A stretch of DNA of 64,000 nt from Macrostomum lignano (Eukaryota), in contig NIVC01002560.1 of NCBI GenBank assembly GCA_002269645.1, positions 1 through 64,000 on the forward strand, written 5' to 3'. Below, piece after piece: positions 8,703 to 54,333 of the stretch. A program made the translations under genes and the position numbers. The notes below the pieces were generated by a model that was not told where the DNA came from, searched no databases, and worked only from the letters and a program-made list of their open reading frames with translations. Position 1 is the first letter of the stretch, and each line of letters begins with the position of its first letter.

Positions 8703-11700
8703 ATGCCGTCGCCAGTAGCAGCAGCCGAGTCCTACCAAACTGCGGGGAGCCTGCACGAGCAGTTCTACAGGCAAGCTCAACTGACTCCAGACCGAGTCGC
8801 CGTTTCGGACGGAGCTGGACGGCAACTCACCTACGCGGAGCTGGATCAACTGTCCAGCAAACTGGCCGCCGAGCTCCGGCTGAAGGGTCTGGATGTGGAG
8901 CTCTGCGGCATCATTTACATGGAGAGATGCATCGAGTATGTGGTGGCTTACATTGCCATACTCAAAGCCGGTCAGTTACTCGACTAAATATCGTCTTTCA
9001 TTCTCCATACGGATTTGATGACTGCGCATTATCAGTTGAAGCTGACGAAAGATTTAAGACCAGGGTGGGATGGTCTAGGCAGGCCCAAATTTGGAAAGCG
9101 TCCTTTTCAGTGTAACTGACAGACTACATGAAGTAACTGGGGTCAAGCAGCTCAAGCTTACAAAGCCTGCTGTGTCGTCGTGAGCAGGAATATGGCGTAC
9201 GTGTTACCCTGTAGGTGTAGAAGACGTACGTGTAAAATCAGACACAACGAACGGTCTGTTTTGAAATTTTGCTACGAGTATCTGAAAGAAGTTACTATTG
9301 TTAAATGCCCATATCGCATTCGCAGGTGGAGCCTACCTCCCCATGGACTTGTCCTACCCCGACTCGCTAATCGAGAGCGTCCTGTCCGATGCTGAGCCTC
9401 GTGCTGTGCTGACAAAACCCGACCTGCTACAGCGCTTGCCTGAATCAGCGCGCAGCCTTGCGTGGGTCTTCTCTGACAACTGGCAACAGGAACTCAATGA
9501 GCTGCGATGCGACACCAGCTGCGTCCCCGTCTCCATCGATCTGGACGCCCTCGCCTTCATCGTATACTCCAGCGGCACCACCGGCAAGCCGAAAGGCATC
9601 GGCATGCCGCACCGCGGTGCTGTCTTTTCTTACCACTGGCGTCACGTGACTTACCCTTATGACGAGTCCAACGGACCGGAGCGCGAAGCCTGTAACGTTT
9701 TCTTTGTATGGGAGATGCTGCGTCCGCTGATGAAGGGTCAATGTCTTTATGTTGTGCCCGACGATGTCATCTACGATCCACCAAAGCTGCTGGAGTATAT
9801 GCGGAAAAACTGCATCACCCGGATGCTGTTCACGCCGTCACTGCTGGAGACGGTGCTTGATTCGGAGGCGGAAAGAGTTCAAAAGGCTTGCGCGAGCCTC
9901 AAGTTCGTACTAAAAATTTCTGTCTTAAATTTTCTATGTTTCTACACCTCCGTAATAAATAGACGTTACACCGTTCCATGATCCCAGATTGTATGACAGC
10001 GACTTTGAAACACCACCAAAACATTTACAGGCAAATCTGGCTCTGCGGCGAGGTGGTTACCACAAGCCTCTTGGAGCGCTGTCAATCACTGCTGCCCAGC
10101 ACCCGCGTCATCAACCTGTACAGTATCTCCGAGTGTCACGACGTGGCCGCCAGAGATCTTACGGATTACCTGAAGCGGATTCAGCGCAGACCGGAGGAAC
10201 GACGCAAGTTCTGCCCCGTGGGCTGGCTGCTACCAGGAGTCCAGGTGGTCATCTTAGACGAAGCGCTCAATCCGCAGCCGGTGGGGGCGGCTGGAGAGGT
10301 AAGAGTTCCGTTCAAACGTTGGGGACCGGTAGAGGTAATTCAACATTACTATAGAGTTTCGACCAAAAATTACAAAAACCCTGAGCCGAGACTGACTACT
10401 TGCATTCGTATATCTGTCAAACCCATTTCCGCTCGATCGCAGATCTACGTGGCCGGGCCAACCCTGGCCAAGGGCTACGTGAAGCGCCCAGACCTGAATC
10501 GCAGCAAGTTCATTCAGGCGCCGAAAGCCCTCGGCAGCCAGGCGGGTGAGCGGCTGTACCGCACAGGCGACTGGGGCTACCTGCTCTCGGACAGCAGCCT
10601 GGAGATCTGCGGTCGCTGCGACAGTATGGTCAAAATCCGGGGCTACTCCGTGGAGGTTCAGGCGATCGAGGTGGCCCTGCTGGACAGCGGGCTCGTCAAC
10701 GCCTGTGTGGTGCTGGTGAAGGGCGGCGAAGGCGAGGACAAGTTCCTTGTGGCGTACGTTGTTCCATCGAACGGCGACCTCACAAAAAGGCAGCTGCGAT
10801 CCGCTCTGAAACGAAAGCTGCCGTTCTACATGATCCCAAGCTACTTCGTCTTCCTGGCCGAGTGAGCCCCTGTCTGAGTGCGATTCTGTGTAGAATACTT
10901 AGGAAGCCTGCTCACATGAGCGTGCTAACCATGAGCAGCCACAGAGTTGCAGCGCAGTACCTATGTCATTAAATTTTACTACCCACCCATCGTAGCCTGC
11001 CCGTAAGCGCGATCGGCAAGCTGGACAAGGCCTCGCTGCCTCCCTTCGACAAGGCCCAAGAGAGCCTGGACTGCTCGTTTCTGCCGCAGACCGCCACAGA
11101 GAAAAGCCTGGCGGCCATCTGGATGGCTACACTGGACATCAAGGAGATCGACATACAGGAGAGCTTCTTCGACTACGGCGGGTAAGATAGGCTGACTTCG
11201 TATAGCAACTGTAGGTCATTTTTTCGAAGATTTGTATTTTGAACAGATCAGGGCAAAATGATCTCAGTTTGCTTTAATTTTCCAAAGCAGAAAGACCCAA
11301 GTTCGCAGGCAAATCCCAGTCCACAGCAGCCAAACCATCGCCGTTTTCCAGCCACTCCCTGCTAGCGACAAAGCTGCTCTCAAAGGTGAACGAGCAGCTG
11401 GGCTGCCAGCTGTCCGTGAAGGAGCTGTTCCAATACCCCACGGTGCAGGAGATGGCCCGCCTGATCGACTCTGCGGCGGCGCGGGGCACTGGGACCGCCG
11501 ACGAAACGCCGGAGGCCGAGGCGAGAACCTTCGATTTGAAAACCGAGGTGGCCAATCATGACCAGCCGCAGGCTTCAGAGTGAGCCGTTGGAATCTGCCT
11601 ACCTGCCTGTTTTATGCCTGTAGAGAAAATAAGACTAAAAACACTAGAACTAAATTAGATGATAAATTGAATACTAAAGGAGCCAGTAAGTGGGCGCAGG

Positions 11701-14700
11701 GCCCAAACCGATATATTTATTGAACATTTAACTTTGGGGGGTTGAGCCCAGAATAATAAGGAGAGGGAGTGGAGTGCGCGACTGAAGAGAGAGGCGAGAA
11801 TGGAGAGCCAATCAGAAGGCAGTAAGGGAAAGAGAGATAAGAATAACAAGATTGAGCTAGACAGAGAGAGAGAGAGAAAACAGAGTAAACAGAGACAAGT
11901 GAAGGTGAACTAAGAAATGAATAGGAAAGTCGCGACAATGTCAGTATTGTGCCTAACCCAATCTCACATGCCAAATCATTCGGCAGCCTGGATATCCAGC
12001 TGCGCGCATTCTGGCGCAACCCGCACTTCAACAAGTCGCGCTGGTCCCGCGGCCGCGTCCTTCTAACCGGCGCTACTGGCTTCCTTGGCGCCTTCCTGTT
12101 GCGCGACCTGCTGCGCCTCACCGAAACGCAAGTCTTCTGTTTGGTTCGCGAGACCGGAAGCGGCGACCCTGGGGGCCTGCAGCGGAGGCTGAGATCTACC
12201 CTAGAGCAGTTCCTCATCTTGCGGCCCAAAGGACAGGAGGATGATCAAACAAAGGACCTTGCGGCTGCTTTTGAAGCCCGGGTGACCGTTATTAGGGGTG
12301 AGTGCGCTGCTGGTTGCAAAGTTCGCATTGGAGTTTTGGGCAACCCGACCTACCTGTAGGGAATTTCAGACATATAAGAAGCCTCAGAGTTTCTCCTATC
12401 CTGGTGTCGGCAAATCAGGGCGAAGCTGGCGAAGTCAAGACCTGTTTTCTAAGAAAACTGCAATTCTCATTGTTAAAAACTGACGCCATTCGCAGGAGAC
12501 CTCAGCCTGGTGAAGTTCGGCCTCTCAGAGGATGACTACGCCTTCCTGAGCAGCGAGATCGACGTAGTGATTCACGCTGGTGCCTACGTAAACCTTATTT
12601 ACCCGTACACGGTGAGGGACTCTCCTTATTTGCTGTTTTAGCGCATGCTAGTTGCTCTGCTAGCCCTCTGCAGTCACTCACAGACCGACAAAACCAGAAA
12701 AAGTGCACTGAATTCCGACCATTCACAGGCTCTGTACGGACCGAACGTGCTGGGCACGCAGAACGTGATCCTGTTTGCGTCAGCGGTCCGCGTCAAGCCA
12801 GTGCACTATGTCAGCACCGACGCTGTGTTTCCGAACGGTCTGGCCGACTGCCGCGAGGACGCCGACACCAGCGTCCACGCTCAAGAACTCGCCGACGGAT
12901 ACAGCCAGACCAAATGGGTGGCCGAGCAGCTGCTCATGAAGGCTCGGGCCCGAGGCATGCCGGTGATCGTGTACCGGCTGGGCAACCAAGCCGGGGACCG
13001 GGCCAACGCCGCCTGGAACCCGCAGGACCTGACGCTGCTCATGCTGCAGGTTGGTTGCTGCTGTGGACCCACGGGGTATCAATGGACATAGTTATCTTGC
13101 CGAGTGGCTGTGCGTACTGGTGCAGTTCCTGAAAGAACACTTACTAAGCACTTTTTGCTACTCACCGACTTTCAGGGTGTGCTACGCAGTGGGCAGGCGC
13201 CCCGTCTCAACTGGCGCTTGGAGTTCACTCCGGTAGACTTTACCAGCGAGGTCATCGTGCGCGCCATGGCCCAGCTCAGCCTGCACGCTGGCAAGATTTT
13301 TCACCTGGTTAATCCGCAGCCAATCAGCTTTGACCTGCTCTGCGATTGGTTGTCGGTTAGCGGCTATACCTTGCGCCGCGTGGACTACGCTGATTGGCTG
13401 GTGGAGCTGCGGCAACTAGCTGAGGCCTGCCAGCCAATCGCATCGCTGCTGCGCCTGTTGGAGGAGCTGGCCCCGTCTGGCGGATCCCAGTACTTTGGGC
13501 AGCTCAGCACCTTTGACTCGAGGCAGCTGCGTGCTGCTCTGCCCAGCCTGGGCTTGGAGAGCGGATATCCGGCCATCGAGTCCAGCCTGCTGGCCGTGTA
13601 CGTGGCCCGCCTGGCCGAGCGGGGCCTCCTGCCGCGGGCCAGGAGAAACACCTCCGGCGGAGCGTTGCTAGGCAAGGTTGCCATGGTTACCGGGGCCAGC
13701 AGCGGAATCGGACAGGTGCGAACAGCACCTCACTGTATTGCAAGTGAATGAGAGGTCAATAGAGAATTGTACAATTAAAAGCGTCGAAGTATAGTAGAAT
13801 GTATTTTGGATGTCCGCCATTAGCGAATTAAAATCTATCCATAATTTCTCTTCCGTAAAAAAGCTTCCACCTGGTCCCAAAGCGCATTCAGAATTAAATG
13901 GGAAAAGCTCAATAATTGTTCAACAATTTCCGTCCGCCATGTGAATCCCGAGGTTTCAATTGTTGCATTAAGAAGACAACATCCTGCATCTAGTGAGCTT
14001 GCTGTCCGAAGTCATGCACAAAAGTCCCTGTTTCCCAACAACCACAGGCGGTAGCGCAGGCCCTGGCTAGAGACGGCTGCCAGGTGGCGCTGGTTGCCAG
14101 GCGCGCTGACCAGCTGGAGCAGGTGCGCCAAGGCATTCTGGCTGCGCAGGGCGTGGCGGTCGCCTGCCCAGCCGACGTGACCTCCCGCGCCGAGGTCGAG
14201 GCCGCCGTGGCGCGCTGCCGGTCGCTGCTCGGCCAGCCGGACATCCTGGTGAACAGCGCCGGGGTGATGTACTATACCAGGGCGTTCAGCGGCCTGACGC
14301 ACCTCACCGACCGCACCATCGACGTCAACTGCCGAGGCCTGGTGCACACGGTGGAGGCCGTGCTGCCCATCATGCTGGACAGGGGTGGCGGCCACATCGT
14401 CAACTTGAGCAGCGACGCTGGTCGGGCTCCGTTTCCGGGCTTGGCCGTGTACACGGGCTCCAAATTCTTCGTGGAAGGCTACTCCAGGGCCCTGCGCCTC
14501 GAGGTGGCGAGTCGAGGCCTTCGCGTCACCTGCGTGCAGCCCGGGGACGTGAGAACTCCGCTGCAGGTGAGCAGGTTTTGAGAACAAGAGGCACTGGATT
14601 TCTAATGCTTCTCATTCTGGCTGGCAGGTTTTCCCTCGCAAGCTGAGTCAGAGTGCCTACTGTGATGACTGTAGAGGGACGGTAGAGAGCGTTTCACAAG

Positions 14701-15502
14701 CTCGAAAAAGACTTTCCGGCCCTTTCATTTGCTCGAGACTTCAAAAGCACGAAATGGCAAATAAACGTTACTGTTAAGCTATAGAGAGTTCTTCGGTAGA
14801 TTGTTCGTTGATATGAAATTTCCTATTTTGTGAAGCTTCTATCTTCCGAAAGGGACAATGGGAGCTAGGAAGTGCTGAACAAGCGTATTTTGATTAGCGT
14901 TCATCGGTCGCAATTTCCCAGTCGCTCTGATGTGCCAGCGGCCCGGGCTCGATTCCAAGTGCAGTCGCATTAATTAGGGGCTAAACTGGAATCTCGGCTT
15001 GGCTACTCGTGGAATTCACACCCTTGAGGGCCAACCCCCAAGGCACAGTGAAGTGCACATGCCTAGCGATTAGAAACTCAGGGCCGCTGTACACTCCTGT
15101 GTGAGTGTGTGCCTGCACGTATGACTGCGTACGTATCCGCGCGCTGGTGTGCCTGCTCAGGGGAGTCGGCGGACTGGGCAGCAATGCCTCTCGCCGGTTG
15201 TGTGACAATTTCGCTGCTGTATTTTCGCCACAGACAAAAGAATGGCTTTAATGCTAAAATTCAACTCCATCCACTTATCTCAATTCTCCGCTCCGACCCC
15301 GATGACCCGCATCTCCTTTGCTCAACTGCAGGCCTGCCGGGACGACGCGGATTCGGAAGCGCACAAGGAGTTCAGCGGGCAGGGCAAGTACACCATGCTT
15401 GAGCCGGAGGACGTCGCCAGGGCGATTCTGTACGCTCTGCAGCAGCCGCCGCACGTGGGCGTCAACGAGATCCTGGTGGAGCCTCGGGAGGCACCGATTT
15501 GA
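8703..15502 (+). CDS. ATRR: NRPS-like A-T-R-SDR enzyme, homolog of fungal ATRR glycine betaine reductase (12 exons, ~1307 aa)
   Basis: Exons 8703-8970, 9326-9902, 10031-10298, 10443-10861, 10996-11181, 11352-11579, 11987-12297, 12496-12611, 12729-13049, 13176-13715, 14048-14566, 15332-15502; all GT-AG, phases compatible, total 3924 nt. A domain: YSSGTTGKPKG, CNVFFVWEMLRPL, YRTGDWG, GRCDSMVKIRG, GKLDK. PCP: FFDYGG|HSLLA. Thioester reductase: LTGATGFLG, GYSQTKWVAE. SDR: VTGASSGIG, YTGSK, C-terminus VNEILVEPREAPI. Confidence 0.9.
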
Positions 15503-15603
15503 GCTGCTGCACTTTTTTACTGTTTGCAGGCGATATGGGGACTGAAAGTACCTCGATGGAATTTGAAGGCGTATTTAATAGATTGAGGAAGCATCAGGTG
15601 CGT

Positions 15604-15797
15604 CAGGAGCCACTCTGGGTGTCAGGGGAGCCACTCTGGGTGTCAGGGGGAGCCACTCTGGGTGTCAGGGGGAGCCACTCTGGGTGTCAGGGGGAGCCAC
15701 TCTGGGTGTCAGGGGGAGCCACTCTGGGTGTCAGGGGGAGCCACTCTGGGTGTCAGGGGGAGCCACTCTGGGTGTCAGGGGGAGCCACTCTGGGTGA
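15604..15797. repeat. 21-bp tandem repeat (GGGAGCCACTCTGGGTGTCAG) x~9
   Basis: Near-perfect copies ~100 bp downstream of the ATRR-like stop codon. Confidence 0.95.
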
Positions 15798-17040
15798 GCA
15801 AGGAATTTTATCAATGATAAATTCTGCAATCAGATTTCCAGAGCCTACGAGTCTATGAGGCAGCCAGAACACGGATTCATTTTAGTTTTGTCATCTTTCA
15901 TTCTGTACTTCGCCACCTAGAGCTGGCAGATTTTCGCTATCATTTTTTGCACTTTTTAGAAAGTTTAGCCAGACCTTTAGCTAGTCTCATTTACGCAATC
16001 AGTGTTAGTAACTTGCTTTAACCCTATTTATAATTATTAACATTTTACAAGCGGTGAAGTGTAACAAATAGTTATTCACAGTCAATTCAAGAGCCACTGT
16101 GGCTGACTGCACTGCACCCAGGACGCTGCACTCGCAAATTTTTGGGAATTTGCTGAATTATAGGCGTTGATTCGGAAAGAAACCCGCGTTTACGAGAAAA
16201 ATGAATAAATTAAATAATACCAACTTCTCCCGCTGGCATGCCGAGTGCAGCGTCCTTCTAGCCTAGAAGTCCTTGCCCTCATTCTGGTTGTTCACAAATC
16301 ATAACGAATGATTTACTCCCAGCTTTTATGATTCCGCATTCGCTCCAGCTTTATACAACAATAGTTCGCAATGGTTGTATCTCTTTATGGTTATTATTAC
16401 AATATTATCTTTTTAACTACTAATAGTACGCTCGTAGTTTTTATTTAGCATCTAGCAGTTAGAATTCTTCTGATCAAGTTTATCATATTGCTTAGATCTA
16501 CTACTACTACTACTAGATTATCGACCTAGATGTAGCTCTTTCCGTTCAGTAAATAAACCAGGCACCGGCAACCGGCATTCAAATGTTGAGCGGCAGTTTC
16601 GTATTGGTTAATTTGAAGCTTGACCGGCACAGCGCAAAACAGTGCAAAGGCGTAAAGGCTCTTTCACACCGCTAAAAAGCTAGATGATGTAGAAGTTGAT
16701 GCTGGAGTTGGAGCTGATGGCTCTCATCAATGAGTGCGAAATGATAATGACCTGAAGCAAATACAAAGTTTGGTGCTATGTACTAGTTAGTTATGCATTA
16801 TGCATCAATAATAATATACAGTATTGGTAATAAGGTTTTTTACTGAGATAAGCTCTGCGATAAACAAGGTTTCTTAGAAAATAAAAACTGGACTGTACTT
16901 TTCAAATGACGCTGAGAGCTGAAGCATACTATTGGAAAGTCCAACTGAGGTCTCTGTGGAGTATGGGCCCATAAAGAGGATCTGAAGGTGGCGATGGGCC
17001 TGAAATTTAGGATCTGAAAAGATGGAGGTGGCCCAGTCTG

Positions 17041-17625: not shown

Positions 17626-20600
17626 ATGGACTGCGAAGTGGTCACTCAAGTCGACGTCCACAAAAGCAGGGATAACTTCAACGAATCTGAGTCCGGCTCC
17701 AGCGCGTCATCGGTGTCCCGCGATGACTGGCTTCAGCTCGAGATGATGCTGGATTTGTCGCCACCGAGACCAGCCAACGGGCAGATGAGGACCAAAACTA
17801 TGACTAGGGCTACAAAGAGTCTGATGACCAGCACAAAGACTGCAACGGCGGCCCCAGTTTGCGCGGACCGCAGCCAGGGACAGAGCAGCTTGGAGCAGCT
17901 GGACATCTCCGAGTACATGCGGCTGCTTCATAGACTTCGCCGGCGAAGGCGTCTTCTCGGCCTGGGTCGCGGCGCCCGGCAGCAGCTCCAGCGGCTGGAG
18001 GCGGCCCAGCGTCGTCTCCGGCAGCTGCTGGCCAGTCGCGAAGCTGACGAAGGCGAAGAAGGCTGGGAGATCCTGGAGGAGACGGAGGGCGCCGACGATC
18101 GCGACAACTCCTCGTCTGTGACGCTGCTGGACTGCAGCCTGCGGAACTCCAGCAGCCTGGCAGCCGCCAGGGATTCTCAGCGCCAGTCAGCGATGCGGTG
18201 AGCTGCTGTTTGTGTTTGCACCAATTTAGAACCTAAATTGCTGCATATAGTACTGATGAGGGAGCATCAGCGCGAATTTCAAATAAACAAGCGTTCGATA
18301 ACTGTGTTGATTATCTTTGATTCGCCCCCAACTAAAGGGATCCTGGTCACAAAGAAGCTGGTCTCGATGCGGTGGCATTGCGACTGCACCTTCCGATCGA
18401 TAAGCGGGAGCAGAAATCTGACGAGCAAGAGCAGCAAACTGGTGAGCAGCAAGCTGGTGAGCAGCAAGCTGGTGAGCAGCAAGCTGGTGAGCAGCAAGCT
18501 GGTGAGCAGCAAACTGGTGAGCAGCAAGCTGGTGAGCAGCAAGCTGGTGAGCAGCAAACTGGTGAGCAGCAAGCTGGTGAGCAGCAAGCTGGTGAGCAGC
18601 AAGCTGGTGAGCAGCAAGCTGGTGAGCAGCAAACTGGTGAGCAGCAGGCTGATGAGCAGCAAGCTGGTGAGCAGCAAACTGGTGAGCAGCAGGCTGATGA
18701 GCAGCAAGAGCTATCAACCTTGGAAATTCGCCCGTCTGACGAGCCGCTGTCCGCAGGCAGCAATTTGGAGTCCACGAGGCGCCTGCCGCAACTGGCCCTG
18801 CACCTGCCGGATCCGCTGGACGATTCAGCGAAGGCAAAACAGCAGAGAGCTCGCCTGAAGCAGCAGGAGCATCAGCTCACGATGCAGCACCACCAGCAGC
18901 TTCCGCCTCCCAAAGCGGCTCGGCCGTTGCCGCTGCTGCCGAACCCTCCACCGCCAGGTCCAAAGTCAATTTTGGCGCTGACGCAGCTGATGGCCTGCCG
19001 CCTGCCCGAGCCGGTGATCTCTCTCTCCTTTGACCCCGTAGGCCGGCGGCTCATTTGCGCGGAGCCGAGCAGAGGCATCTGCTTCCGCTCTGTCACCTTC
19101 TCCGGGGACGACTTGGCGGCTAGCAAGCGCCTCGACTGGCGCATCTGGGCCCGTTCCGCCTGCGTGCTGCCCTCCGGACATCTGCTGGTAGCGACCACGT
19201 GCAATTTGCAGGTTTGTAGACAGCCAAAAAGTACAGGACACGGAGCATTGAGTACAGGACACAGAGCATTGAGTACAGGACACAGAGCATTGAGTACAGG
19301 ACACAGAGCATTGAGTACAGGACACGGAGCACAGAGTACAGGACACGGAGCATTGAGTACAGGACACGGAGCACAGAGTACAGGACACGGAGCACAGAGT
19401 ACAGGACACAGAGCATTGAGTACAGGACACGGAGCACAGAGTACAGGACACGGAGCACAGAGTACAGGACACAGAGCATTGAGTACAGGACACAGAGCAT
19501 TGAGTACAGGACACGAAGCACAGAGTACAGGACACGGAGCATAGAGTAGTGGACACGGAGCATAGAGTAGTGGACACGGAGCATAGAGTAGTGGACACGG
19601 AGCATAGAGTAGTGGACACGGAGCATAGAGTAGTGGACACGGAGCACAGAGTAGTGGACACGGAACACAGAGTAGTGGACACGGAGCATAGAGTAGTGGA
19701 CACGGAGCATAGAGTAGTGGACACGGAGCACAGAGTAGTGGACACGGAGCACAGAGTAGTGGACACGGAGCACAGAGTAGTGGACACGGAGCACAGAGTA
19801 CAGGACCCGGAGCACAGAGTAGTGGACACGGAACACAGAGTAGTGGACACGGAGCACAGAGTACAGGACCCGGAGCACAGAGTACAGGACACGTAGCACA
19901 GAGTAGTGGACACGGAGCACAGAGTACAGGACCCGGAGCACAGAGTACAGGACACGGAGCACAGAGTAGTGGACACGGAGCACAGAGTACAGGACTCGGA
20001 GCACAGAGTAGTGGACACGGAACACAGAGTAGTGGACACGGAGCACAGAGTACAGGACACGGAGCACAGAGTACAGGACATAAAGCATTGAGTACAGGAC
20101 ACGGAGAACAGAGAGCACAGGACACGGAGCACAGAGTAGTGGACACGGAGCACAGAGTACTGGACACAAATTAAACATACGCATTGACTTATCTAAAGTT
20201 AACTAGCTCAATAGTTTGTTTGGCTAAACTGGTCGCATAAAATCCTCCGCTAGGTGATTCGGCCGGACGGAGTTCGCTTGTCCACGAGCGAGCGCCGCTT
20301 CCCCATCCTGGCCATGGCAGTGTACGAGCGGATCGCCTACATCGCTACCTGCAAGCCGGGCAACGACCAGAAGGGCAACTACTTCATCCAGGTGTTCGAG
20401 CTGCCCCGCCTTACACCGTGGAGTCGGCACCCGTTCAGCGGCTACCATCTGCTGTCCTCGCCAACGGAGATGTGCACCCTGAGCAACCTGGCAGTGATTG
20501 CCCAGACAGACGATGCCGTTCAGGTGATCGAGATCGACTCCGGCCGGCTGCGCCAGAACCTGCAAATGACCTACCGTCGGGGACCGAAGCACGTGGCGGC

Positions 20601-20874
20601 CTGCAACAAGCTGGGCCTGCTGTTCCTGTCCCTGCTGGCCGAGCGCTGCATCCAGATCTACCAGCTGCGCCGGGACGTGCTGGAAAAAGTCGGCAACTTC
20701 CGCGACCCGGCGTTGCTGCCCGGCCCGCTGGCCTGGCTGCCCGTCAACGGCATCCTGTTCTGCGCCTGCAGCTTCGTGGACGATGCGCGGCGCAGCGAGA
20801 TTCGAACTCTGGGCCTGCACGAGGCAGACAGGACCAACTGGACGCCCAGATGCATCCGCCTGATGCCGCTGTGA
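17626..20874 (+). CDS. Uncharacterised protein (~688 aa): low-complexity/coiled N-terminus, (EQQAG)n repeat, C-terminal beta-propeller-like region
   Basis: Exons 17626-18197, 18338-19211, 20254-20874 join in frame through GT-AG introns (2067 nt). GC3-rich coding-like codons. C-terminal part has short beta-strand-like segments with a spacing suggestive of a propeller; no family recognised. Confidence 0.65.
18436..18708 (+). repeat. 15-bp coding tandem repeat (GAGCAGCAAGCTGGT) x~18 encoding EQQ(A/T)G
   Basis: In-frame within exon 2 of the 17626-20874 gene. Confidence 0.9.
19231..20165. repeat. Intronic 21-bp minisatellite (GAGTACAGGACACGGAGCACA / GAGTAGTGGACACGGAGCACA)
   Basis: About 44 copies fill intron 19212-20253; variant types are clustered along the array. 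Confidence 0.95.
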
Positions 20875-23826: not shown

Positions 23827-26598
23827 TCACACAAGCGCTTCTACTTGTGCAGCCGCCAGTGGGTCGCTGGGTAGCGGACCAGATCTTCGCCGCAGGTTCA
23901 TCTGCTTCTGACCTCTCGTCTCTCGCGACCGCATCGCCGTCAAGCAGACCAGCTCGATGAGTTCAAAGGCCACCGCCAAGGTGCAGCCGATGGTCAGCGA
24001 GCCGAGGCCGCCGATTCGAGCCAGCAGTGCCGGCAGCGTGATCTGCAGAACCTCCGTGCGCAGGAGAGTGTCGTATGAGCTACGGCTCACAGTCACCAGG
24101 GTCAGCTTCTTCAGCTTCAGCCGCTGCTTGCGCTCCGCCTCATCACTGCTGCTCTGTTGAGAGGCTCTGATCGCAGCATAGCAATCGTAGAGTAAAAGCA
24201 ATGCAATGCTTATTGTTTTCAAATTATTCAGGTAAACAATATAAAAGCATCTCTCACCTCATCGCAGATTTTCGATTCGTGCTAAGGTAGCTCTCCAGAG
24301 TCCGATCTGCCGCCTCGCGGTGGCTGTAACTGACGTTTTGACGCGCCAGCACCTCCTAGGAATGCGTGACATTCAATGCCAGACGCAGTTGTGAAGCCGA
24401 AGGTAGCCAGCGGGCTGAGCTCGCCTGCAGCTCGTAGCGGTTGAAGTTGCACCTCTGTGGGCAGTGCTGCGAGCGAAGCTTCGCTGTCCGGGTGGGCAGC
24501 CGGATGTCCCGGACGCAGTTCAGCCGCCGCCCCAGCAACTGGTCGTGCAAGTGACAGAACGGATGCGTAGCATTCGGCGGGCTGGCGACCAGGTGGAAGG
24601 CCGACACGCAGCCACATTCGGCAAGAATGAGGCGGCCGATGGCCTCGCTCATGCAGCCAGTAAAAGTGTACCGGTACACCTGATCGAAGTCACGCAGTCG
24701 CCTCTCCGGAGTTTCCGGACTGCAGCCTCCGGACAGTTCGACTGACTCCGCATCGTCCGAGCTGCGACCGCCAACGCTGAGCCGTCGCCGTTGAACAAGA
24801 CGATAACGCAGCTCCGAGTTCTGCTGAAGACCAACGCTGACGCCGTGCCTGTCGATGTCCGGATGCGTTCCGGGCTCGTGCAGCGTCACCCGCATGCCCA
24901 GCGCCTGGGTGAACACGTCGTGCACGTGGGCCCGGAAGTGCTCTGCTTCTTGCTGGCCATTGCTGTCTGCGCTGCTGCTTCCTGAGTCGCTATCTGCATC
25001 CTCATCGCCCTGCGGCTTGAGAAGGTCACCGGACTGTAGCACCAGAGAGACGGAGCTCACCTGAGACGAATCATAACGATAATTTATAGCACGAGACGTT
25101 CGCAATGATAATCGATCGATAGGGTCGTAGGATCGTAAATCTAACAGAATTTTTTCGCATAACTGAACTAGAGCCCAGTAATACCTCTGTTAATTTGTTC
25201 ACACGAATCGCTTCCGTGTGATGTCCAAGTCAAGTGCTACGCCTCGATTCCCGATAGTCTGTTTAACACTAAACAATGTCTGCTGCGCGCGCGCTTCCAT
25301 GAAGTACGAGCCAGCACTAATTAATGGCGTGTTAGCACCACTTGTTTGTGAAATCCTAGTTAAGTTCATAAAGGTCAAAATTCTTCAGCCCACAATACGC
25401 GCACCTGGATCGAGTAAACCCATGGCTACGAAGTTACTTTCAACCCACCTAGGTAGGACGTTAGCGAGTTTTTCCATAATTGTTTTAGCTAAAATAAGGT
25501 TTGACATTTGGGCTTGGAACAGGAGCCACACGTCCGCATAGTGCCTTCACAGCTTCACCGCACCGCCGACAATAATAATGAAGCGATACCCACAGAAATT
25601 TGTTTCCCACCTGAGGCGAGTCGGACTCATCAATGGTAATGTCGTAGCAGTTCAGGTACAGCGGGTGCCGCGCCAGCTGAATGGTCATCCGGCAGGTCTC
25701 GTCGTGGCTCACGGATGGATTGTTGTTCTTGGAGTGGCGCATCAAACACAGCAGCACCATCTCCTCCGGTCGCAACCCGACTGAACGGGCCTCGTCCACG
25801 CCCAGGTTCTGGAAGTAGGTGGACAGCTTGTCCGTGAAGAACAGCTCCTTGGCGGCGGGCCGGTAAGCGTTCAGCATGCTGGCGCGCAACTCCTATTGAA
25901 ATGAGCACCAGCGAAGCATGTTTGTTGTAACCATGAACTTTCCCTGAGTGTACGAAACAAACTCAGACTAGCTAGAGCTTCAAGTTTTATCGGCATCGGA
26001 AATTTTTCGCCGTTGTGATGAGGAATCGGGATTCACTGGTGTAGGGTTCTTGTTTTATTATGACCCAGTCCCATAAACATCGACTGGTTTTATTGCACAT
26101 GGTGAACAGCAACTCTAAACTTTGGATCTTTTTGGATACATGTCGAACGAAAAGTCTAAATTTTATGTCCTTTTGGCTGCTTCTAAGCGAGAGTTCGATG
26201 CTTATGATTTCTAAAAAATGATACCAAGGGTTTCTCGTGTAGCTATTGTTTCCCTCCTGACCCATAGCTTGCGTCACCTGGTTGAGCTGACCCGGCGATT
26301 TCACTCGGCCGGACTGCCAGAGTCCCGCCGCGGCGAACCCGATGGGACCCTGGCTGCACAAGCAGATGGCGGGCAACGGCGTTACGTGCTGTACTCGATC
26401 ACTCTCTTACACGGTCACGTGATAGTCCAGGTATAACACCAAGTAGTAGACGCTGCTGAGCAGCAGCGTTGCCATGGAGATGAAGTAGACCAGCCAGAGC
26501 ACCCGGAGGCCGGTCACGGGTGCGCGGTAGAAGCCCCGGAAGCCTCGCATGGAGTTGCGCTCGATAAACGTCTCCAGACAGAGTCGCAGAAGGCCCAT
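23827..26598 (-). pseudogene. DEG/ENaC (amiloride-sensitive channel family) gene with two in-frame stop codons
   Basis: Exons 26598-26278, 25892-25611, 25060-24258, 24166-23827 join in frame (1746 nt). TM1 (LRVLWLVYFISMATLLLSSVYYLV), PLPAICLC, HPLYLNCY, Cys-rich CGC...C...C..RC, TM2 IGGLGSLTIGCTLAVAFELIE. Internal TAA at 26409-26407 and TAG at 24358-24356. Confidence 0.8.
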
Positions 26599-27673: not shown

Positions 27674-30600
27674 CTACTCGCCCACCGCCCTGGCGTAGAG
27701 CGGCTCGCTCTCCAGGCGCCTCGACTGCAGCATCTGGGAGCGGGCCAGGTCCCGCGCCTTGCTCATCTCCACCGCCTGTACGGCCGCGTCCGCCCACTTG
27801 ATGTTCTGGTCCATGGCTTGCGATGTGGAGCCGCCCCGCTCCGGATACACGTGGTTGAGCAGGCGCTGCAATATTCATTGCATATAATTACTACATTTAC
27901 TCCAAGTATGGCTTTACTATTTACAACTAAATAATCTTGTACGTGCGTACGTACGCTAAACTAAAAGTGGTTTGTCGGTATGTCTGTCTGTCGGTATGTG
28001 TGATCTATTTTGCAGGATGACGGTATGTGTGATCTATTTTGATCTATTTTGCAGCTTGCTGCCTGCAGGATGCTTGCTATCTGGGGGATGCTTGCTGTCT
28101 GCAGGATGCTTGCTATCTGGGTGGGTACTTGCTATCTGCGGTTGCTTACTCTTGGAGGGTGAGGGTGCTTGCTATCTGGGGGATCGATACTTGCTATCGA
28201 TACTTACTAAGGGGAATGTCTGTTATCTTTGTGAAAGTTTTATTTGTCGTCTTTTTTAATTTTAGATAAAAAGAATCATAGCAAACAAATTTGTCCGTGA
28301 CAATTTTAGTTGAATAAGGTGATTTCTAAAACTGAAGAAGGAATCGGTTCTTAAGAAAATGTGCTTTTTTTAATTGTTTTCCATAAATAATTTTTTCTCT
28401 TTGCTTATTGGGCGCCCCGAATGGGGGCACTAGATTGCTAGTCTTGTTAGTACGCTAAAAGCTCAACGTAAAACGCGGCTTAAAAGCTTTTCAAAACTAA
28501 CCAATCAGTGGGGAATGCCTTAAATACTCAGAAGATGAACTAAAATTAGTGGATACGCTGTAAGAAAACTGACCTCCATTCTGTCGTTCTTTGGCTCCAA
28601 GACTCCCCACTGCTGGCGCTTCTGCACCATCTTCCAAGGCGTCTGCTCCACCGGCCTGGACTTGGTCTTGCGGAACGGAGCCCGAAGGGAGATCTCGCCG
28701 AACATTCGCTGGCAGGGGCCGGTGCGCTGGTAGTTGAAGTACAGATCCGTGTTGTCGGGCGTGTTCTCCTTCAGGAACATGGACACCGCGGCCGGGGCTC
28801 CGTAGGGCTTGCGCCATTTGTAGGGCGGGAACAGAAGGCTCATCATCTTGTCGCACTGGTCGATGGAGGAGTAGCTCGGACCGCGGATGATCACCACCAG
28901 GTACTTCAGCCAGCGGTATTTGCCCATGCGCCGGTTCAAGATGCGCCGAGTCACCTGATTGAGCGAACCAGTGCGCAGTAATGAGGACAAGTTAAGTGGC
29001 ATCTGGTTGTAAGCAGTGCTCAATATAACCTATATTTACTGTTCTATTGCGAATATCAGAAAACACCGTATTTCATATATTGTCATTACTGAATCAATGT
29101 CAAGGTCTTAATTTATTTGCAGTCTTAATTTATTTGCAGTCTTAATTTATTTGCAGTCTTAATTTATTTGCAGTCTTAATTTATTTGCAGTCTTAATTTA
29201 TTTGCAGTCTTAATTTATTTGCAGTCTTAATTTATTTGCACCACGGTGCAGATAAATGCCGCTACCTCCTCGTGGTCAGAGCGGAGAGCCGCGCTTAACT
29301 GCTGCGGCGGCCAAATGCGGCAGGACCAAGCGAGGGCAGCGGAGCGCCCGTCGGCGTGTTGAGCGCCGGCGTGAGCGGAACCGACGAGGCCGGCTGCGTG
29401 GCGCCGCCCGTCGAGCTGCCGCGCGGGTCCACTCGGATCCTCCGGGTGGCGCCGGGGACCGTGAGGCTCAACTGCATCGAGCCCCAGCCGTACCACAGGG
29501 CATGCTTCGGGTCGGGACGCTGAACTGCCGCACTCTCAAGGCTGCTTGGCGTAGAGGGGTGCTAGCGAAGCTGGCGTACGACCTGAGCTGCGACATCATC
29601 TCGCTGCAGGAGGTGTCTATCAAGGCCGACCCGGGACTTCATTGTGAGGACTTGGGCGCCGGGTGGACCCTCTACTATACTTCTGCGGACCAGCGAGGCC
29701 GTGGAGGAGTTGGAGCGCTGATCGGGCCGAGGCTGCAGCAGAGCTGTCGCTGCGTCTCCCTGTCCCCCCGGTTGCTTCGGATCGACGTCCGGCTACGCGG
29801 TCGGAATGCTCGCCTGTTCTGCGCGTACGCGCCCCCTGCCACACGCCCTGACGAGGCTCAAGAGTTTTTCGAGCAGCTCTCAGTGCAGGTAGAGGCGACG
29901 GCGCAGCGTGACACAGCGGTCGCCCTCGGAGACCTGAACGCAGTCCTGCGTAGGTCCGAGAGGTCGCTGTTCGTGACGCCACGCGGGAACAACAACACCG
30001 AGGCACTGGAGGACTTCCTGGAGAGGCAGGACATGGTGTCGGCCAACACCCGCTTCCGCAAGCCACTGAGCGGTCTCGCAACCTTCGTGGGCTGCAAGCG
30101 GAGGCGACGGAACGCGCGTGGCAGGAACGCAACCCGGAGACAAGCACAGCTCGACCACGTGCTCGTGCGTTTCCGTGAGCGTCGTCGCGCCGTCAACTGC
30201 CGCACCATCACGCCGCTGGCTCTGCGGTCCGATCACCGGCTCCTCATCTGCGACCTCAACCTTCGCGATCCGCTCTACCGTCCGCCGAAGCGGCCACCGC
30301 GGCGCTACTACCGCGCGCTCAGAGCCACCGATACGCAGCGTCGCTTTGCTAGCGCCTTTAACACCGCGCTGGGCGACAAGCGTGGAAGTGCCGAGTATGC
30401 GGAAGTGTGCGCTGCAGTCAGAACCGCCGCGGAGCAAGCAGTCCCGATGATGCAGCCGGCTCAACGTGGGCAGCCGGTCTGGCAGGACGACCCCGCGATT
30501 CAGGCAGCGAGGGAAGATCTGGAGAAGCTCCGCTTGAGCAGGCAACCAACCCGCGAGGCAGAGGCAGCTCTGGCAGCTGTCTACCTGCAGCGCCAACAAG

Positions 30601-34310: not shown

Positions 34311-35678
34311 ATGCGCGAGTGCATCTCCATACACGTTGGCCAAGCGGGAGTGCAGATTGGCAACGCGTGCTGGGAGCTTTATTGCTTAGAGCATGGTATC
34401 CAACCAGACGGCCTGATGGCTTCCGCTGGTAGAGAGAAGTGCGACGACTCTTACAACGCATTTTTCTCGGAGACCAGCTCCGGTCACTACGTGCCTCGGA
34501 CTGTCTTTGTTGACCTGGAGCCGACCGTCATTGACGAGGTGCGCTCCGGCACCTACCGGCAGCTGTTTCACCCGGAGCAGCTCATCACTGGCAAGGAGGA
34601 TGCAGCGAACAACTACGCACGCGGCCACTACACCATCGGCAAAGAAGTCGTGAGCAGCGTTCGCGAGGTCATCAACCGAGTAGCGGAGAACTGCGCCGGC
34701 CTGCAGGGCTTTCTGGTGTTTCACTCGTTCGGCGGTGGCACTGGAGCCGGCTTCACCTCGCTGCTCATGGACAAGCTCTCTTCTGAGTACGGAAAGCGAG
34801 CGAGGCTGCAGTTTGCCGTCTATCCGGCGCCCCAAGTGTCCACAGCCGTGGTGGAACCGTTCAACGCAATTCTATGCACTCACGGCACCCTGCGACACTC
34901 GGACTGCGCTTTCATGGTTGACAACGAGGCCATATACGACATCTGCCGGCGCAACCTTGACGTTGAACGGCCAACCTACACAAACTTGAACCGCATTATC
35001 AGTCAGATTGTCTCCTCTATCACGGTGTCGCTTCGCTTCGATGGCTCTCTCAATGTTGACATCACCGAGTTCCAAACCAACCTTGTGCCTTACCCGAAAA
35101 TTCATTTCCCACTAGCAACGTACGCCCCAATTATCTCAACCGAGAAGGCTCACCATGAGCAACTGAAAGTGAAGGAGATTACCAACGCCTGCTTCGAGGC
35201 CTCCAATCAGATGGTGAAGTGCGATCCGCGGCACGGAAAGTACATGGCCTGCTGTCTGCTTTACCGCGGTGACGTTTCATCGAAAGACGTGAACGAAGCC
35301 ATTCAGAAGATCAAGAGCAAGCGTGAGATCCAGTTTGTTGACTGGTGTCCCACCGGCTTCAAGGTGGGCATCAACTATCAGCCGCCGACCACGGTGCCAG
35401 GCGGGGACCTGGCAAAGGTGCCGCGCGCTGTCTGTATGCTGAGCAACACCACCGCCATTGCAGAGGCCTGGGACCGACTGGCGTACAAGTTCGATCTGCT
35501 TTATTCGAAGCGCGCCTTCGTCCACTGGTACGTTGGCGAGGGCATGGAAGAGGGCGAGTTCGCCGAGGCCCGGGAGGACCTGGGGTCCATGCAAAAGGAT
35601 TACGAAGAAGTTGGCGTTGACAGCGTCGAGGGTGAGGAGGAAGAAGTCGACGAGCTCGAAAAGGACAAAGATGAATAG
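34311..35678 (+). CDS. TUBA: Divergent alpha-tubulin, intronless (455 aa)
   Basis: [30 protein letters not shown] start, GGGTG(A)[30 protein letters not shown]; single uninterrupted ORF. Confidence 0.97.
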
Positions 35679-37018: not shown

Positions 37019-51576
<14,558 letters not shown>

Positions 51577-53630: not shown

Positions 53631-54333
53631 CTTAGGGTTAGGGTTTAGGTTTAGGGTTAGTAAGGTTAGGGTTTAGGTTTAGGGTTAGTAAGGTTAGGGT
53701 TTAGGTTTAGGGTTAGTAAGGTTAGGGTTTAGGTTTAGGGTTAGTAAGATTAGGGTTTAGGTTTAGGGTTAGTAATGTTAGGGTTTAGGTTTAGGGTTAG
53801 TAAGGTTAGGGTTTAGGTTTAGGGTTAGTAAGGTTAGGGTTTAGGTTTAGGGTTAGTAAGGTTAGGGTTTAGGTTTAGGGTTAGTAAGGTTAGGGTTTAG
53901 GTTTAGGGTTAGTAAGGTTAGGGTTTAGGTTTAGGGTTAGTAAGGTTAGGGTTTAGGTTTAGGGTTAGTAAGGTTAGGGTTTAGGTTTAGGGTTAGTAAG
54001 GTTAGGGTTTAGGTTTAGGGTTAGTAAGGTTAGGGTTTAGGTTTAGGGTTAGTAAGGTTAGGGTTTAGATTTAGGGTTAGTAAGGTTAGGGTTTAGGTTT
54101 AGGGTTAGTAAGGTTAGGGTTTAGGTTTAGGGTTAGTAAGGTTAGGGTTTAGGTTTAGGGTTAGTAAGGTTAGGGTTTAGATTTAGGGTTAGTAAGGTTA
54201 GGGTTTAGGTTTAGGGTTAGTAAGGTTAGGGTTTAGGTTTAGGGTTAGTAAGGTTAGGGTTTAGGTTTAGGGTTAGTAAGGTTAGGGTTTAGATTTAGGC
54301 TAGGTTAGGGTTAGGGTTAAAGTTAGGGTTAGG
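53631..54333. repeat. Telomere-derived 28-bp satellite (GTTAGGGTTTAGGTTTAGGGTTAGTAAG) x~24 with plain TTAGGG at both ends
   Basis: Direct reading; lies in GT32 intron 53577-54698. Confidence 0.95.

What the first reader, a model, noticed from the sequence alone, without database searches (positions are those of the whole stretch)
8703..15502. Intron-bearing animal gene for an NRPS-like A-T-R-SDR enzyme resembling fungal glycine-betaine reductase (ATRR)
Seen: 12 exons splice cleanly into ~1307 aa with adenylation, PCP (GGHSL serine), thioester-reductase (TGATGFLG, YSQTK) and SDR (TGASSGIG, YTGSK) domains; no frameshifts or stops; 11 GT-AG introns and exon composition like the neighbouring PKC gene, so it is a resident gene. 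Established: A-T-R-R is the architecture of fungal ATRR, which activates glycine betaine and reduces it in two steps to choline (Hai, Huang and Tang, PNAS 2019; recalled from memory). The NVFF(V)WE.LRPL segment and the EPR..PI C-terminus match my recollection of that family. Animals are known to oxidise choline to betaine; the reverse route is not part of textbook animal metabolism. Inference: this animal may salvage choline from dietary or osmolyte betaine using a phosphopantetheinylated NRPS-like enzyme.
Basis: partly seen in the sequence, partly recalled or inferred. Interest (0 to 1): 0.88.

Follow-up and report, generated by a model that had tools for sequence, protein, structure and literature searches.

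The report
Flatworm betaine-to-choline reductase gene (ATRR)
This is an intact, already annotated gene of the flatworm Macrostomum lignano for a four-domain enzyme that probably turns glycine betaine back into choline; the family is known in fungi, has been reported in invertebrates since 2019, and so the gene is a sound but ordinary new member.

Summary
Twelve exons (8703-15502, + strand) splice through 11 GT-AG introns into a 1307-aa protein with adenylation, carrier, thioester-reductase and SDR domains.

The window is GenBank contig NIVC01002560.1 of Macrostomum lignano. My exon model is identical to the RNA-seq-derived annotated protein PAA56890.1 ("hypothetical protein").

It is a resident animal gene:
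- Eight of the 11 introns sit at the same position and phase as in an abalone, and six of these also in Trichoplax.
- Orthologues about 50% identical occur across invertebrate phyla.
- With a bacterial outgroup, animals form one clade (173/200 bootstraps).

The substrate pocket lacks Asp235. It carries the published ATRR aromatic cage (Phe215/Phe216/Trp218/Trp285) plus an acidic residue, Asp319 where Aspergillus has Glu304. All catalytic residues are intact.

Glycine betaine to choline is therefore the best-supported function, but it is inferred. I could not retrieve a fungal ATRR sequence for direct alignment.

Novelty is low. Hai et al. (2019) already noted invertebrate orthologues, a nematode ATRR was studied in 2024, and RefSeq names abalone and sea-anemone orthologues "glycine betaine reductase ATRR".

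In passing: Dehalococcoidia bacteria carry a 992-aa A-T-R relative with the same pocket.

The parts
8703..15502 (+). Whole gene (ATG to TGA), 12 exons and 11 GT-AG introns. It is GenBank BOX15_Mlig012098g1 / PAA56890.1 on NIVC01002560.1.
8703..8970 (+). Exon 1 (aa 1-89 plus 1 nt): N-terminal part of the adenylation domain, ending in AILKAG|G. The phase-1 intron is shared with Haliotis.
9326..9902 (+). Exon 2: A3 motif YSSGTTGKPKG and the pocket residues Val214 (PheA 235), Phe215 (236), Phe216 (237), Trp218 (239) at 9697-9711, and Leu257 (278).
10031..10298 (+). Exon 3: pocket residues Trp285 (PheA 299; 10038-10040), Cys287 (301), Leu311 (322), Asp319 (330; 10140-10142) and Val320 (331), plus the A5-like NLYSISE motif.
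10443..10861 (+). Exon 4: A7 YRTGD and A8 GRCDSMVKIRGYSVE motifs, and the C-terminal subdomain of the A domain.
10996..11181 (+). Exon 5: A10 motif with Lys519 (PheA 517) and the start of the carrier domain. It ends inside FFDYG|GHSL; this phase-2 intron is shared with Haliotis and Trichoplax.
11352..11579 (+). Exon 6: carrier (PCP) domain. The phosphopantetheine attachment residue Ser575 lies at 11356-11358.
11987..12297 (+). Exon 7: start of the thioester reductase R1, with the Rossmann motif TGATGFLG (aa 676-683).
12496..12611 (+). Exon 8: R1, continued.
12729..13049 (+). Exon 9: R1 catalytic Tyr849-x3-Lys853 (YSQTK; Tyr codon at 12900-12902).
13176..13715 (+). Exon 10: C-terminal part of R1, the linker, and the start of the SDR domain R2 (TGASSGIG, aa 1070-1077).
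14048..14566 (+). Exon 11: R2 core with Ser1200 and Tyr1213-x3-Lys1217 (YTGSK; Tyr codon at 14450-14452).
15332..15502 (+). Exon 12: C-terminal end of R2 (…EPREAPI) and the TGA stop.

Best explanation
The gene encodes the Macrostomum lignano orthologue of the eukaryotic NRPS-like enzyme ATRR. The proposed mechanism has four steps. (1) The adenylation domain binds a small carboxylate carrying a quaternary ammonium head group, most likely glycine betaine. Binding occurs in an aromatic cage (Phe215, Phe216, Trp218, Trp285) backed by Asp319, and the domain activates the substrate with ATP. (2) The acyl group is passed to the phosphopantetheine arm on Ser575 of the carrier domain. (3) The thioester reductase R1 (Tyr849/Lys853, NADPH) releases betaine aldehyde. 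(4) The fused YdfG-like SDR R2 (Ser1200/Tyr1213/Lys1217, NADPH) reduces the aldehyde to choline. The net reaction is betaine + ATP + 2 NADPH -> choline. What is shown here: the gene structure, the domains, the intact catalytic and pocket residues, and vertical inheritance within animals. What is inferred: the substrate, the product and the physiological role (choline salvage or control of the betaine osmolyte pool in this intertidal flatworm).
For: Architecture and motifs: all four domains are present and intact.

Pocket: it was mapped on PheA/1AMU numbering as V-F-W-L-W-C-L-D-V-K. Asp235 is lost. Phe236, Phe237, Trp239 and Trp299 are present, with an acid at position 330. These correspond to the A. 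nidulans determinants F201/F202/W204/W270/E304. Residue spacings match the published numbers: FFxW; Trp-to-Trp 67 against 66; Trp-to-acid 34 against 34; and the first Gly of the R2 Rossmann motif to the catalytic Tyr 142 against 142 (G1036/Y1178 against G1071/Y1213).

Family conservation: in 101 family members Phe236, Trp239, Asp330, Lys517, the carrier Ser and the R2 Tyr/Lys are invariant. The R1 Tyr/Lys are present in 99, with the other two gapped.

Functional precedent: the protein is 44-45% identical to plant-parasitic nematode orthologues. The M. incognita member of that group relieved betaine toxicity in yeast.

Naming: RefSeq names the Haliotis and Nematostella orthologues 'glycine betaine reductase ATRR'.

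The gene is functional and resident: the annotation is built from RNA-seq transcripts and is identical to my model. The second genomic copy differs at 8 aa, with dN/dS 0.22. Eight of 11 introns are shared in position and phase with Haliotis and six of these with Trichoplax. Metazoa are monophyletic in 173/200 bootstraps against a bacterial outgroup, and the flatworm grouped with protists in 0/200.
Against: No direct alignment or tree with a fungal ATRR could be made; three retrieval attempts failed. Position 330 is Asp in all 101 animal and protist sequences I aligned, whereas A. nidulans and the diatom enzyme are reported with Glu. No fungal sequence scored among the best 120 hits, which bottom out at about 40% identity; the nematode paper reports 32.6% between the nematode and Aspergillus proteins. 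A diatom A-T-R1-R2 enzyme was reported to make tryptophanol from tryptophan, so the architecture alone does not fix the substrate. No animal ATRR has been assayed in vitro; the nematode evidence is a yeast growth phenotype plus RNAi. The dN/dS estimate rests on only 20 substitutions.
Confidence: 0.7

Rival explanations
1. The chemistry is the same (adenylation, thioester, then two NADPH reductions of a carboxylate to an alcohol) but the physiological substrate is different. Candidates are another small cationic osmolyte acid such as dimethylglycine, sulfobetaine, beta-alanine betaine or proline betaine, or an aromatic amino acid as reported for the diatom PtNRPS1.
For: Position 330 is Asp, not the Glu304 of A. 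nidulans, in every animal and protist sequence examined. Positions 301 and 322 (Cys, Leu) could not be compared with the fungal code. PtNRPS1 has the same architecture but was reported to bind tryptophan and salicylates. Position 299 varies across the family (W, H, I, V, L, T), which hints at pocket plasticity.
Against: The flatworm keeps the full Phe/Phe/Trp/Trp cage, including Trp at 299 as in the betaine-specific fungal enzyme. PtNRPS1 has Phe there, and its authors argue this enlarges the pocket. Asp235, which binds the alpha-amino group of amino-acid substrates, is absent (Val214). Nematode orthologues with an even less conserved pocket (His299) gave a betaine-specific phenotype.
Confidence: 0.22
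2. The gene is not a true resident functional gene. It could be a recent horizontal acquisition from a fungus, protist or bacterium, a contaminant contig, or a decaying pseudogene.
For: NRPS-like genes in animals are often suspected of HGT. The flatworm sequence sits on a long branch. The closest relatives outside eukaryotes are bacterial A-T-R proteins at 37% identity.
Against: There are eleven spliceosomal introns, eight at positions and phases shared with a mollusc and six of those with a placozoan. The contig also carries PKC, alpha-tubulin and DEG/ENaC genes and flatworm-type repeats. GC3 (0.78) resembles that of the neighbouring tubulin gene (0.72). Metazoan monophyly has 86% bootstrap support, and phylum-level clades are recovered. 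The ORF is intact in two genomic copies with dN/dS 0.22. The annotation is transcript-derived.
Confidence: 0.03
3. It is a fatty acid synthase or a linear-gramicidin-type peptide synthetase, as the automatic database names suggest (UniProt 'Fatty acid synthase'; older RefSeq 'linear gramicidin synthase subunit D-like').
For: These are the names attached to P0001 and to many orthologues. The best PDB sequence matches are LgrA modules.
Against: There is no ketosynthase, acyltransferase, dehydratase, enoyl reductase or condensation domain. There is a single A-T module followed by two reductases. The names are artefacts of the shared carrier, KR/SDR and A domains.
Confidence: 0.01

Closest known systems
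[quoted passage not shown]
   Same: It has the A-T-R1-R2 architecture and has lost Asp235. It has the Phe-Phe-x-Trp motif, the second cage Trp, an acidic residue 34 positions after that Trp, catalytic Tyr residues in both reductases, and the same Rossmann-Gly-to-Tyr spacing in R2 (142 residues).
   Different: The acidic pocket residue is Asp here and Glu304 in Aspergillus. Overall identity is probably below about 40%, since no fungal protein scored among the best 120 hits. The flatworm gene has 11 introns.
Meloidogyne incognita MiATRR and other nematode ATRRs (Zhang et al. 2024, PMC11050029)
   Same: It belongs to the same animal clade: 44-45% identity to the Heterodera, Globodera and Bursaphelenchus orthologues. 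Length (1306 against 1307 aa) and architecture match, and Asp is at position 330.
   Different: Plant-parasitic nematodes have His at pocket position 299 (the paper reports His/Ile for that group), where the flatworm keeps Trp as in the fungal enzyme. The nematode role was framed as plant parasitism, whereas the flatworm is free-living.
Phaeodactylum tricornutum PtNRPS1 (tryptophanol synthase; PMC13194791)
   Same: A-T-R1-R2 architecture and the Phe-Phe-x-Trp motif.
   Different: PtNRPS1 has Phe285 at the second cage position and Glu319. It was reported to bind tryptophan and salicylates rather than betaine. The stramenopile sequences in my alignment have I, V or T at position 299.
Dehalococcoidia (Chloroflexota) 992-aa A-T-R proteins (P0430-P0549; loci L007-L089)
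   Same: They are 37% identical over A-T-R1. The pocket code I-F-W-L-W-N-T-D-V-K (with Phe also at 237) shares the aromatic cage and Asp330.
   Different: They are bacterial and intron-less, with no fused R2 SDR and no betaine-related neighbours in the one neighbourhood inspected. Their function is unknown.
Carboxylic acid reductases, Lys2, and the animal NRPS-like enzymes Ebony and AASDH/ACSF4-U26
   Same: All use adenylation-thiolation logic and depend on a phosphopantetheinyl transferase.
   Different: CARs and Lys2 stop at the aldehyde because they lack R2. Ebony and AASDH lack thioester reductase domains and have other C-terminal domains.

Membership tests
ATRR (NRPS-like glycine betaine reductase) | A single polypeptide with A - T - thioester reductase (R1) - YdfG-like SDR (R2) | tested here: met
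   Pfam: AMP-binding 21-383 and AMP-binding_C 446-519, PP-binding 549-611, NAD_binding_4 675-925, adh_short 1065-1253
ATRR (NRPS-like glycine betaine reductase) | Loss of the alpha-amino-binding Asp235 (PheA numbering) in the A domain | tested here: met
   Val214 aligns with Asp235 of 1AMU. Position 235 is V or I in all 101 relatives.
ATRR (NRPS-like glycine betaine reductase) | Aromatic cage equivalent to A. nidulans F201, W204 and W270 (plus F202) | tested here: met
   Phe215, Phe216, Trp218 and Trp285 lie at PheA positions 236, 237, 239 and 299. The spacing matches the published residue numbers. The mapping goes through PheA and residue numbers, not through a direct alignment to the fungal protein.
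ATRR (NRPS-like glycine betaine reductase) | Anionic residue stabilising the quaternary ammonium group (A. nidulans Glu304) | tested here: inconclusive
   Asp319 lies at PheA position 330, 34 residues after the cage Trp, the same spacing as W270 to E304. It is acidic but one carbon shorter, and it is invariant Asp in 101 animal and protist members.
ATRR (NRPS-like glycine betaine reductase) | Phosphopantetheine attachment Ser in the carrier domain | tested here: met
   GGHSL with Ser575; invariant in the family
ATRR (NRPS-like glycine betaine reductase) | Catalytic Tyr in R1 (Y811) and in R2 (Y1178), and an NADPH-binding Gly in R2 (G1036) | tested here: met
   Tyr849-x3-Lys853; Tyr1213-x3-Lys1217; TGASSGIG with Gly1071 exactly 142 residues before Tyr1213, as G1036 is before Y1178
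ATRR (NRPS-like glycine betaine reductase) | Orthology to the characterised fungal enzyme, shown by direct alignment or a tree | not testable with these tools
   No fungal ATRR sequence could be retrieved. Indirect support comes from the RefSeq names of orthologues and from literature statements on invertebrate and nematode orthologues.
ATRR (NRPS-like glycine betaine reductase) | [quoted passage not shown] | not testable with these tools
   This needs a biochemical assay.
PtNRPS1-type tryptophanol synthase (diatom) | Enlarged pocket with Phe at the second cage position and Glu at position 330 | tested here: not met
   The flatworm has Trp285 and Asp319.
Carboxylic acid reductase / Lys2 (A-T-R) | Ends after a single thioester reductase and releases the aldehyde | tested here: not met
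   A complete extra SDR domain follows R1.
Fatty acid synthase (UniProt automatic name) | KS, AT, DH and ER domains | tested here: not met
   Pfam finds none of them.
Vertically inherited metazoan gene | Intron positions shared with distant animals, and a gene tree that follows the animal phylogeny | tested here: met
   8 of 11 introns are shared with Haliotis and 6 of those with Trichoplax. Metazoa 173/200; nematodes, insects and tunicates 200/200; molluscs 192/200; Ambulacraria 196/200.

The most novel reading that the evidence does not exclude
ATRR may be an ancestral metazoan enzyme. It would have been present, already rich in introns, before placozoans, cnidarians and bilaterians split, and was apparently lost in vertebrates. 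Its A-T-R1 core with the same aromatic-cage pocket also exists in Dehalococcoidia bacteria, contrary to the published view that the family is exclusive to eukaryotes. The invariant Asp330 clade (animals, some protists and the bacteria) may have a substrate preference of its own that differs from that of the Glu-bearing fungal enzyme. No member of this clade has been assayed in vitro.
Probability: 0.2. Interest if true: 0.55.

Novelty: new member of a known kind. Interest (0 to 1): 0.28.

Why it matters
Betaine-to-choline reduction is absent from textbook animal metabolism. If the function holds, this flatworm, and by homology most invertebrate phyla, can regenerate choline from the abundant osmolyte glycine betaine at the cost of one ATP and two NADPH. 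That idea is already in the literature for fungi, nematodes and molluscs, so this locus adds a member rather than a concept. Its practical value is that M. lignano has RNAi and transgenesis, which makes it a convenient animal in which to test the pathway in vivo. The database names of this gene ('hypothetical protein', 'Fatty acid synthase') should also be corrected.

Tried and rejected
1. Fetching a fungal ATRR for direct comparison failed three ways.
- The search of protein representatives would not take the 1307-aa protein or a truncation of it. Run with the Nematostella orthologue, it returned only giant multi-module NRPSs.
- A profile of the 62-aa pocket motif returned only exon-sized ORF fragments.
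- A divergent fragment I guessed to be fungal (P0286, locus L005) turned out to be a frameshifted bacterial gene. The last protein search therefore returned the Dehalococcoidia A-T-R family.
- The supplements of the three key papers hold no sequences, and PMC6535007 is not held.

2. The look-up of encoding contigs found nothing for P0001, P0007 or P0021. The intron comparison therefore rests on Trichoplax and Haliotis only.

3. The first version of my splice mapper produced zero-length exons and failed on the window. It was fixed; for the window I used the hand-checked coordinates.

4. A literature search for the gene IDs Mlig012098 and Mlig028061 found nothing.

5. I considered HGT or contamination, a pseudogene, and the FAS and gramicidin-synthase names, and rejected them (see the rival explanations).

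6. I did not predict a structure.
Full report
**Observation**

There are 12 exons on the + strand from the ATG at 8703 to the TGA at 15500-15502. The coding sequence is 3924 nt, with no internal stop, and encodes 1307 aa. All 11 introns (117-765 nt) have GT...AG ends and pyrimidine-rich acceptors. Exons are GC-rich (0.62; GC3 0.78) and introns are not (0.455). All the quoted motifs are present.

Pfam finds AMP-binding (21-383, 2e-68), AMP-binding_C (446-519), PP-binding (549-611), NAD_binding_4 (675-925, 2e-54) and adh_short (1065-1253, 4e-52). The protein has one adenylation-thiolation module followed by two different reductases. It has no condensation, KS or AT domain.

**Source of the sequence**

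The protein search and the cluster look-up identify Macrostomum lignano, a free-living marine flatworm. Locus L003 is GenBank contig NIVC01002560.1 (assembly Mlig_3_7). It is identical to the first 25,502 bases of the window and carries an annotated gene at exactly 8703-15502. The product of that gene, PAA56890.1 (BOX15_Mlig012098g1, "hypothetical protein"), is identical residue for residue to my spliced model.

The genome paper states that the GenBank annotation is a filtered genome-guided transcriptome assembly built from RNA-seq (PMC5730564). The exon junctions therefore have transcript support, although I did not see the reads myself.

A second copy lies on NIVC01002239.1 (L004, PAA59715.1). 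It has the same 12 exons and differs at 8 residues plus a 2-residue indel. Its dS is 0.012 and dN/dS is 0.22. This fits the duplicated chromosomes of the sequenced DV1 line and fits purifying selection, weakly, since only 20 substitutions are involved.

UniProt's automatic name for these proteins, "Fatty acid synthase", is a misnomer.

**A resident animal gene**

Full-length orthologues 42-51% identical are found across many animal groups:
- molluscs, cnidarians, nemerteans and annelids (a shorter brachiopod model also matches);
- echinoderms, hemichordates and tunicates;
- hemimetabolous insects and nematodes;
- an acoel and Trichoplax.

Stramenopile protists follow at about 44%. No vertebrate appears among the best 120 hits.

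I mapped the exon structures of the Trichoplax (L001, 28 exons) and Haliotis (L002, 24 exons) genes and projected the intron positions onto a protein alignment. Of the 11 flatworm introns, 8 lie at the same alignment column and in the same phase as a Haliotis intron. Six of these also match Trichoplax. One example is the phase-2 intron that splits the GG|HSL carrier motif. Three flatworm introns are lineage-specific, after aa 898, 1078 and 1251. Trichoplax and Haliotis share most of their many introns, so the flatworm gene looks like an intron-reduced version of an old, intron-rich metazoan gene.

A neighbour-joining tree was built on 954 columns of A-T-R1 and rooted with bacterial relatives:

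| Clade | Bootstrap support (of 200) |
|---|---|
| Metazoa | 173 |
| Nematodes | 200 |
| Insects | 200 |
| Tunicates | 200 |
| Molluscs | 192 |
| Ambulacraria | 196 |
| Flatworm grouped with protists | 0 |

The window also carries other genes and repeats:
- a PKC gene (about 38-48 kb);
- an alpha-tubulin ORF;
- a DEG/ENaC exon;
- a LINE;
- many minisatellites.

Recent transfer, contamination and a pseudogene are therefore effectively excluded.

**Mechanism**

The adenylation core motifs are present:
- A3: YSSGTTGKPKG
- A5-like: NLYSISE
- A7: YRTGD
- A8: GRCDSMVKIRGYSVE
- A10 lysine: in IGKLDK

The carrier serine is Ser575 (GGHSL). R1 has TGATGFLG and Tyr849-x3-Lys853. R2 has TGASSGIG, Ser1200 and Tyr1213-x3-Lys1217. 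Across 101 full-length relatives the carrier Ser and the R2 Tyr/Lys are invariant. The R1 Tyr/Lys are present in 99 and gapped in the other two.

For the substrate pocket I first confirmed that a recalled PheA fragment is 100% identical to 1AMU residues 229-335. I then aligned it with the flatworm protein. Positions 330 and 331 follow by ungapped extension just past the end of that alignment. Position 517 was assigned from the conserved A10 motif and the family alignment.

| PheA position | 235 | 236 | 239 | 278 | 299 | 301 | 322 | 330 | 331 | 517 |
|---|---|---|---|---|---|---|---|---|---|---|
| Flatworm residue | Val214 | Phe215 | Trp218 | Leu257 | Trp285 | Cys287 | Leu311 | Asp319 | Val320 | Lys519 |

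Phe216 lies at position 237.

Hai et al. attribute betaine recognition in A. nidulans ATRR to three things: loss of Asp235, an aromatic cage of F201, W204 and W270, and the anionic E304. The diatom paper adds F202. The flatworm has the same residues with the same spacing:
- the FFxW motif;
- Trp-to-Trp 67 residues, against 66 in Aspergillus;
- Trp-to-acid 34, against 34;
- Rossmann Gly to catalytic Tyr in R2 142, against 142.

The one difference is that the acid is Asp rather than Glu. Asp at this position is invariant in all 101 animal and protist sequences.

Position 299 is Trp in most animals. It is His in plant-parasitic nematodes, in line with the variable His/Ile site reported for that group, and I, V or T in the stramenopile clade. 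The flatworm pocket is therefore closer to the characterised fungal pocket than the nematode pocket is. The nematode enzyme nevertheless rescued yeast from betaine toxicity, and its knock-down impaired parasitism in a betaine- and choline-dependent way.

I conclude that the enzyme most likely adenylates glycine betaine, tethers it as a thioester, reduces it to betaine aldehyde in R1, and reduces that to choline in R2. The chemistry class (carboxylate to alcohol via a thioester) is close to certain. The identity of the substrate is an inference, which I put at about 0.7.

**Main caveats**

- I could not obtain a fungal ATRR sequence. Comparison with the characterised enzyme therefore rests on published residue numbers, PheA mapping, the nematode link and the RefSeq names of orthologues. 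It does not rest on a direct alignment or tree (failed attempts).
- A diatom enzyme with the same four domains was reported in 2026 to make tryptophanol, so the architecture alone does not determine the substrate. That enzyme has Phe at the second cage position and Glu at 330, unlike the flatworm.
- The Asp-for-Glu substitution might shift specificity among small cationic acids.

**Novelty**

The finding was scored 0.88 on the premise that an animal betaine reductase is unexpected. The literature says otherwise:
- Zhang et al. 2024 described ATRR across nematode clades III and IV and tested the M. incognita gene.
- RefSeq names the Haliotis and Nematostella proteins "glycine betaine reductase ATRR(-like)".

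The M. lignano gene itself is annotated but carries no functional name. It is a new member of a known kind.

Some interest remains. No animal ATRR has been assayed in vitro. The intron evidence for a pre-bilaterian origin may not have been published. M. lignano is a tractable animal for an in vivo test.

**Noticed in passing**

A fragment that I chased as a possible fungal sequence led instead to a family of 992-aa A-T-R proteins. They occur in at least 155 species-level genomes among the bacterial and archaeal species representatives. All 80 hits listed are Dehalococcoidia or Chloroflexota MAGs, and some come from sponge metagenomes.

These proteins are 37% identical to the flatworm protein over A-T-R1. 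Their pocket code, I-F-W-L-W-N-T-D-V-K with Phe at 237, has the same aromatic cage and Asp330. They lack R2. In the one neighbourhood inspected they sit among housekeeping genes.

This qualifies the statement that the family is exclusive to eukaryotes, and it provides a natural outgroup. Their substrate is unknown.

Noticed in passing
loci L005, L007-L089; proteins P0430-P0549: Dehalococcoidia/Chloroflexota MAGs (at least 155 species-level genomes, some from sponge metagenomes) encode a 992-aa A-T-R protein. It is 37% identical to the flatworm ATRR over A-T-R1 and has the same pocket cage (Phe236, Phe237, Trp239, Trp299, Asp330). It has no fused R2. In the one neighbourhood inspected the neighbours are housekeeping genes (pyrimidine synthesis). 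This qualifies the published statement that the family is exclusive to eukaryotes.
   Followed up: partly
locus L004 (NIVC01002239.1), gene at 10001-16818: A second M. lignano copy of the gene (PAA59715.1, 1309 aa) has the same 12 exons and nearly identical intron lengths. It differs at 8 aa, with dS 0.012. It probably reflects the duplicated chromosomes of the DV1 line. Further partial models exist (PAA86218.1, A0A1I8HJD3, A0A1I8I6Z4).
   Followed up: partly
window 15606-15796: A perfect 22-nt minisatellite (GGAGCCACTCTGGGTGTCAGGG, 8.7 copies) starts about 100 nt after the ATRR stop codon. No AATAAA or ATTAAA signal occurs in the 700 nt after the stop.
   Followed up: no
window 17626-20874: GenBank annotates a 688-aa gene with no Pfam hit here. 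The region consists largely of tandem repeats: a 15-nt unit x18.7 at 18429-18708 and a 21-nt unit x44.6 at 19230-20167. It is either a repeat-built protein or a doubtful gene model.
   Followed up: no
window 29256-32369: An intact 1037-aa ORF with an endonuclease/exonuclease/phosphatase domain and a reverse transcriptase domain. It looks like a potentially active LINE-type retrotransposon. A perfect 17-nt x8 repeat lies just upstream (29105-29240).
   Followed up: no
window 34311-35678: An intron-less 455-aa alpha-tubulin ORF ([13 protein letters not shown]...; Tubulin and Tubulin_C domains) lies about 2 kb downstream of the LINE. It could be an ordinary single-exon gene or a retrocopy.
   Followed up: no
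window 37997-48438: PKC gene on the + strand, with a C1 motif at 37997, GxGxxG at 43083 and DFG/APE at 48424. Right after the GxGxxG exon comes a (CAGA)107 microsatellite (43110-43536), open in frame as (RQTD)n and presumably intronic. On the opposite strand, ending just upstream of the DFG exon and so probably inside a PKC intron, is a 471-aa ORF with a faint GIY-YIG match (46890-48305), possibly a Penelope-like element.
   Followed up: no
window 39437-39503 and 53636-54332: Interstitial telomere-like repeats: (TAACCC)11.7, and a 28-nt unit GGTTAGGGTTTAGGTTTAGGGTTAGTAA in 24.9 copies.
   Followed up: no
window 57137-62000: A 40-nt AT-rich satellite in about 120 copies (4.9 kb) is followed by an integrase-core ORF on the minus strand (62579-63589). 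More than 20 distinct tandem-repeat arrays occur in the 64 kb, in line with the repeat-rich genome described in PMC5730564.
   Followed up: no
window 24356-25105 (minus strand): An exon-sized ORF matches the amiloride-sensitive sodium channel family (ASC/DEG-ENaC, 7e-20). Another host gene therefore lies between ATRR and the LINE.
   Followed up: no
family alignment (proteins P0001-P0120): Pocket position 299 is Trp in most animals. It has changed repeatedly: His in plant-parasitic nematodes, Leu in filariae, I or V in starfish, octopus, an acoel and some Hemiptera, Met in Trichoplax, and I, V, T or C in the stramenopile clade. Phe236, Trp239 and Asp330 never vary. This may indicate tuning of pocket size.
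   Followed up: partly
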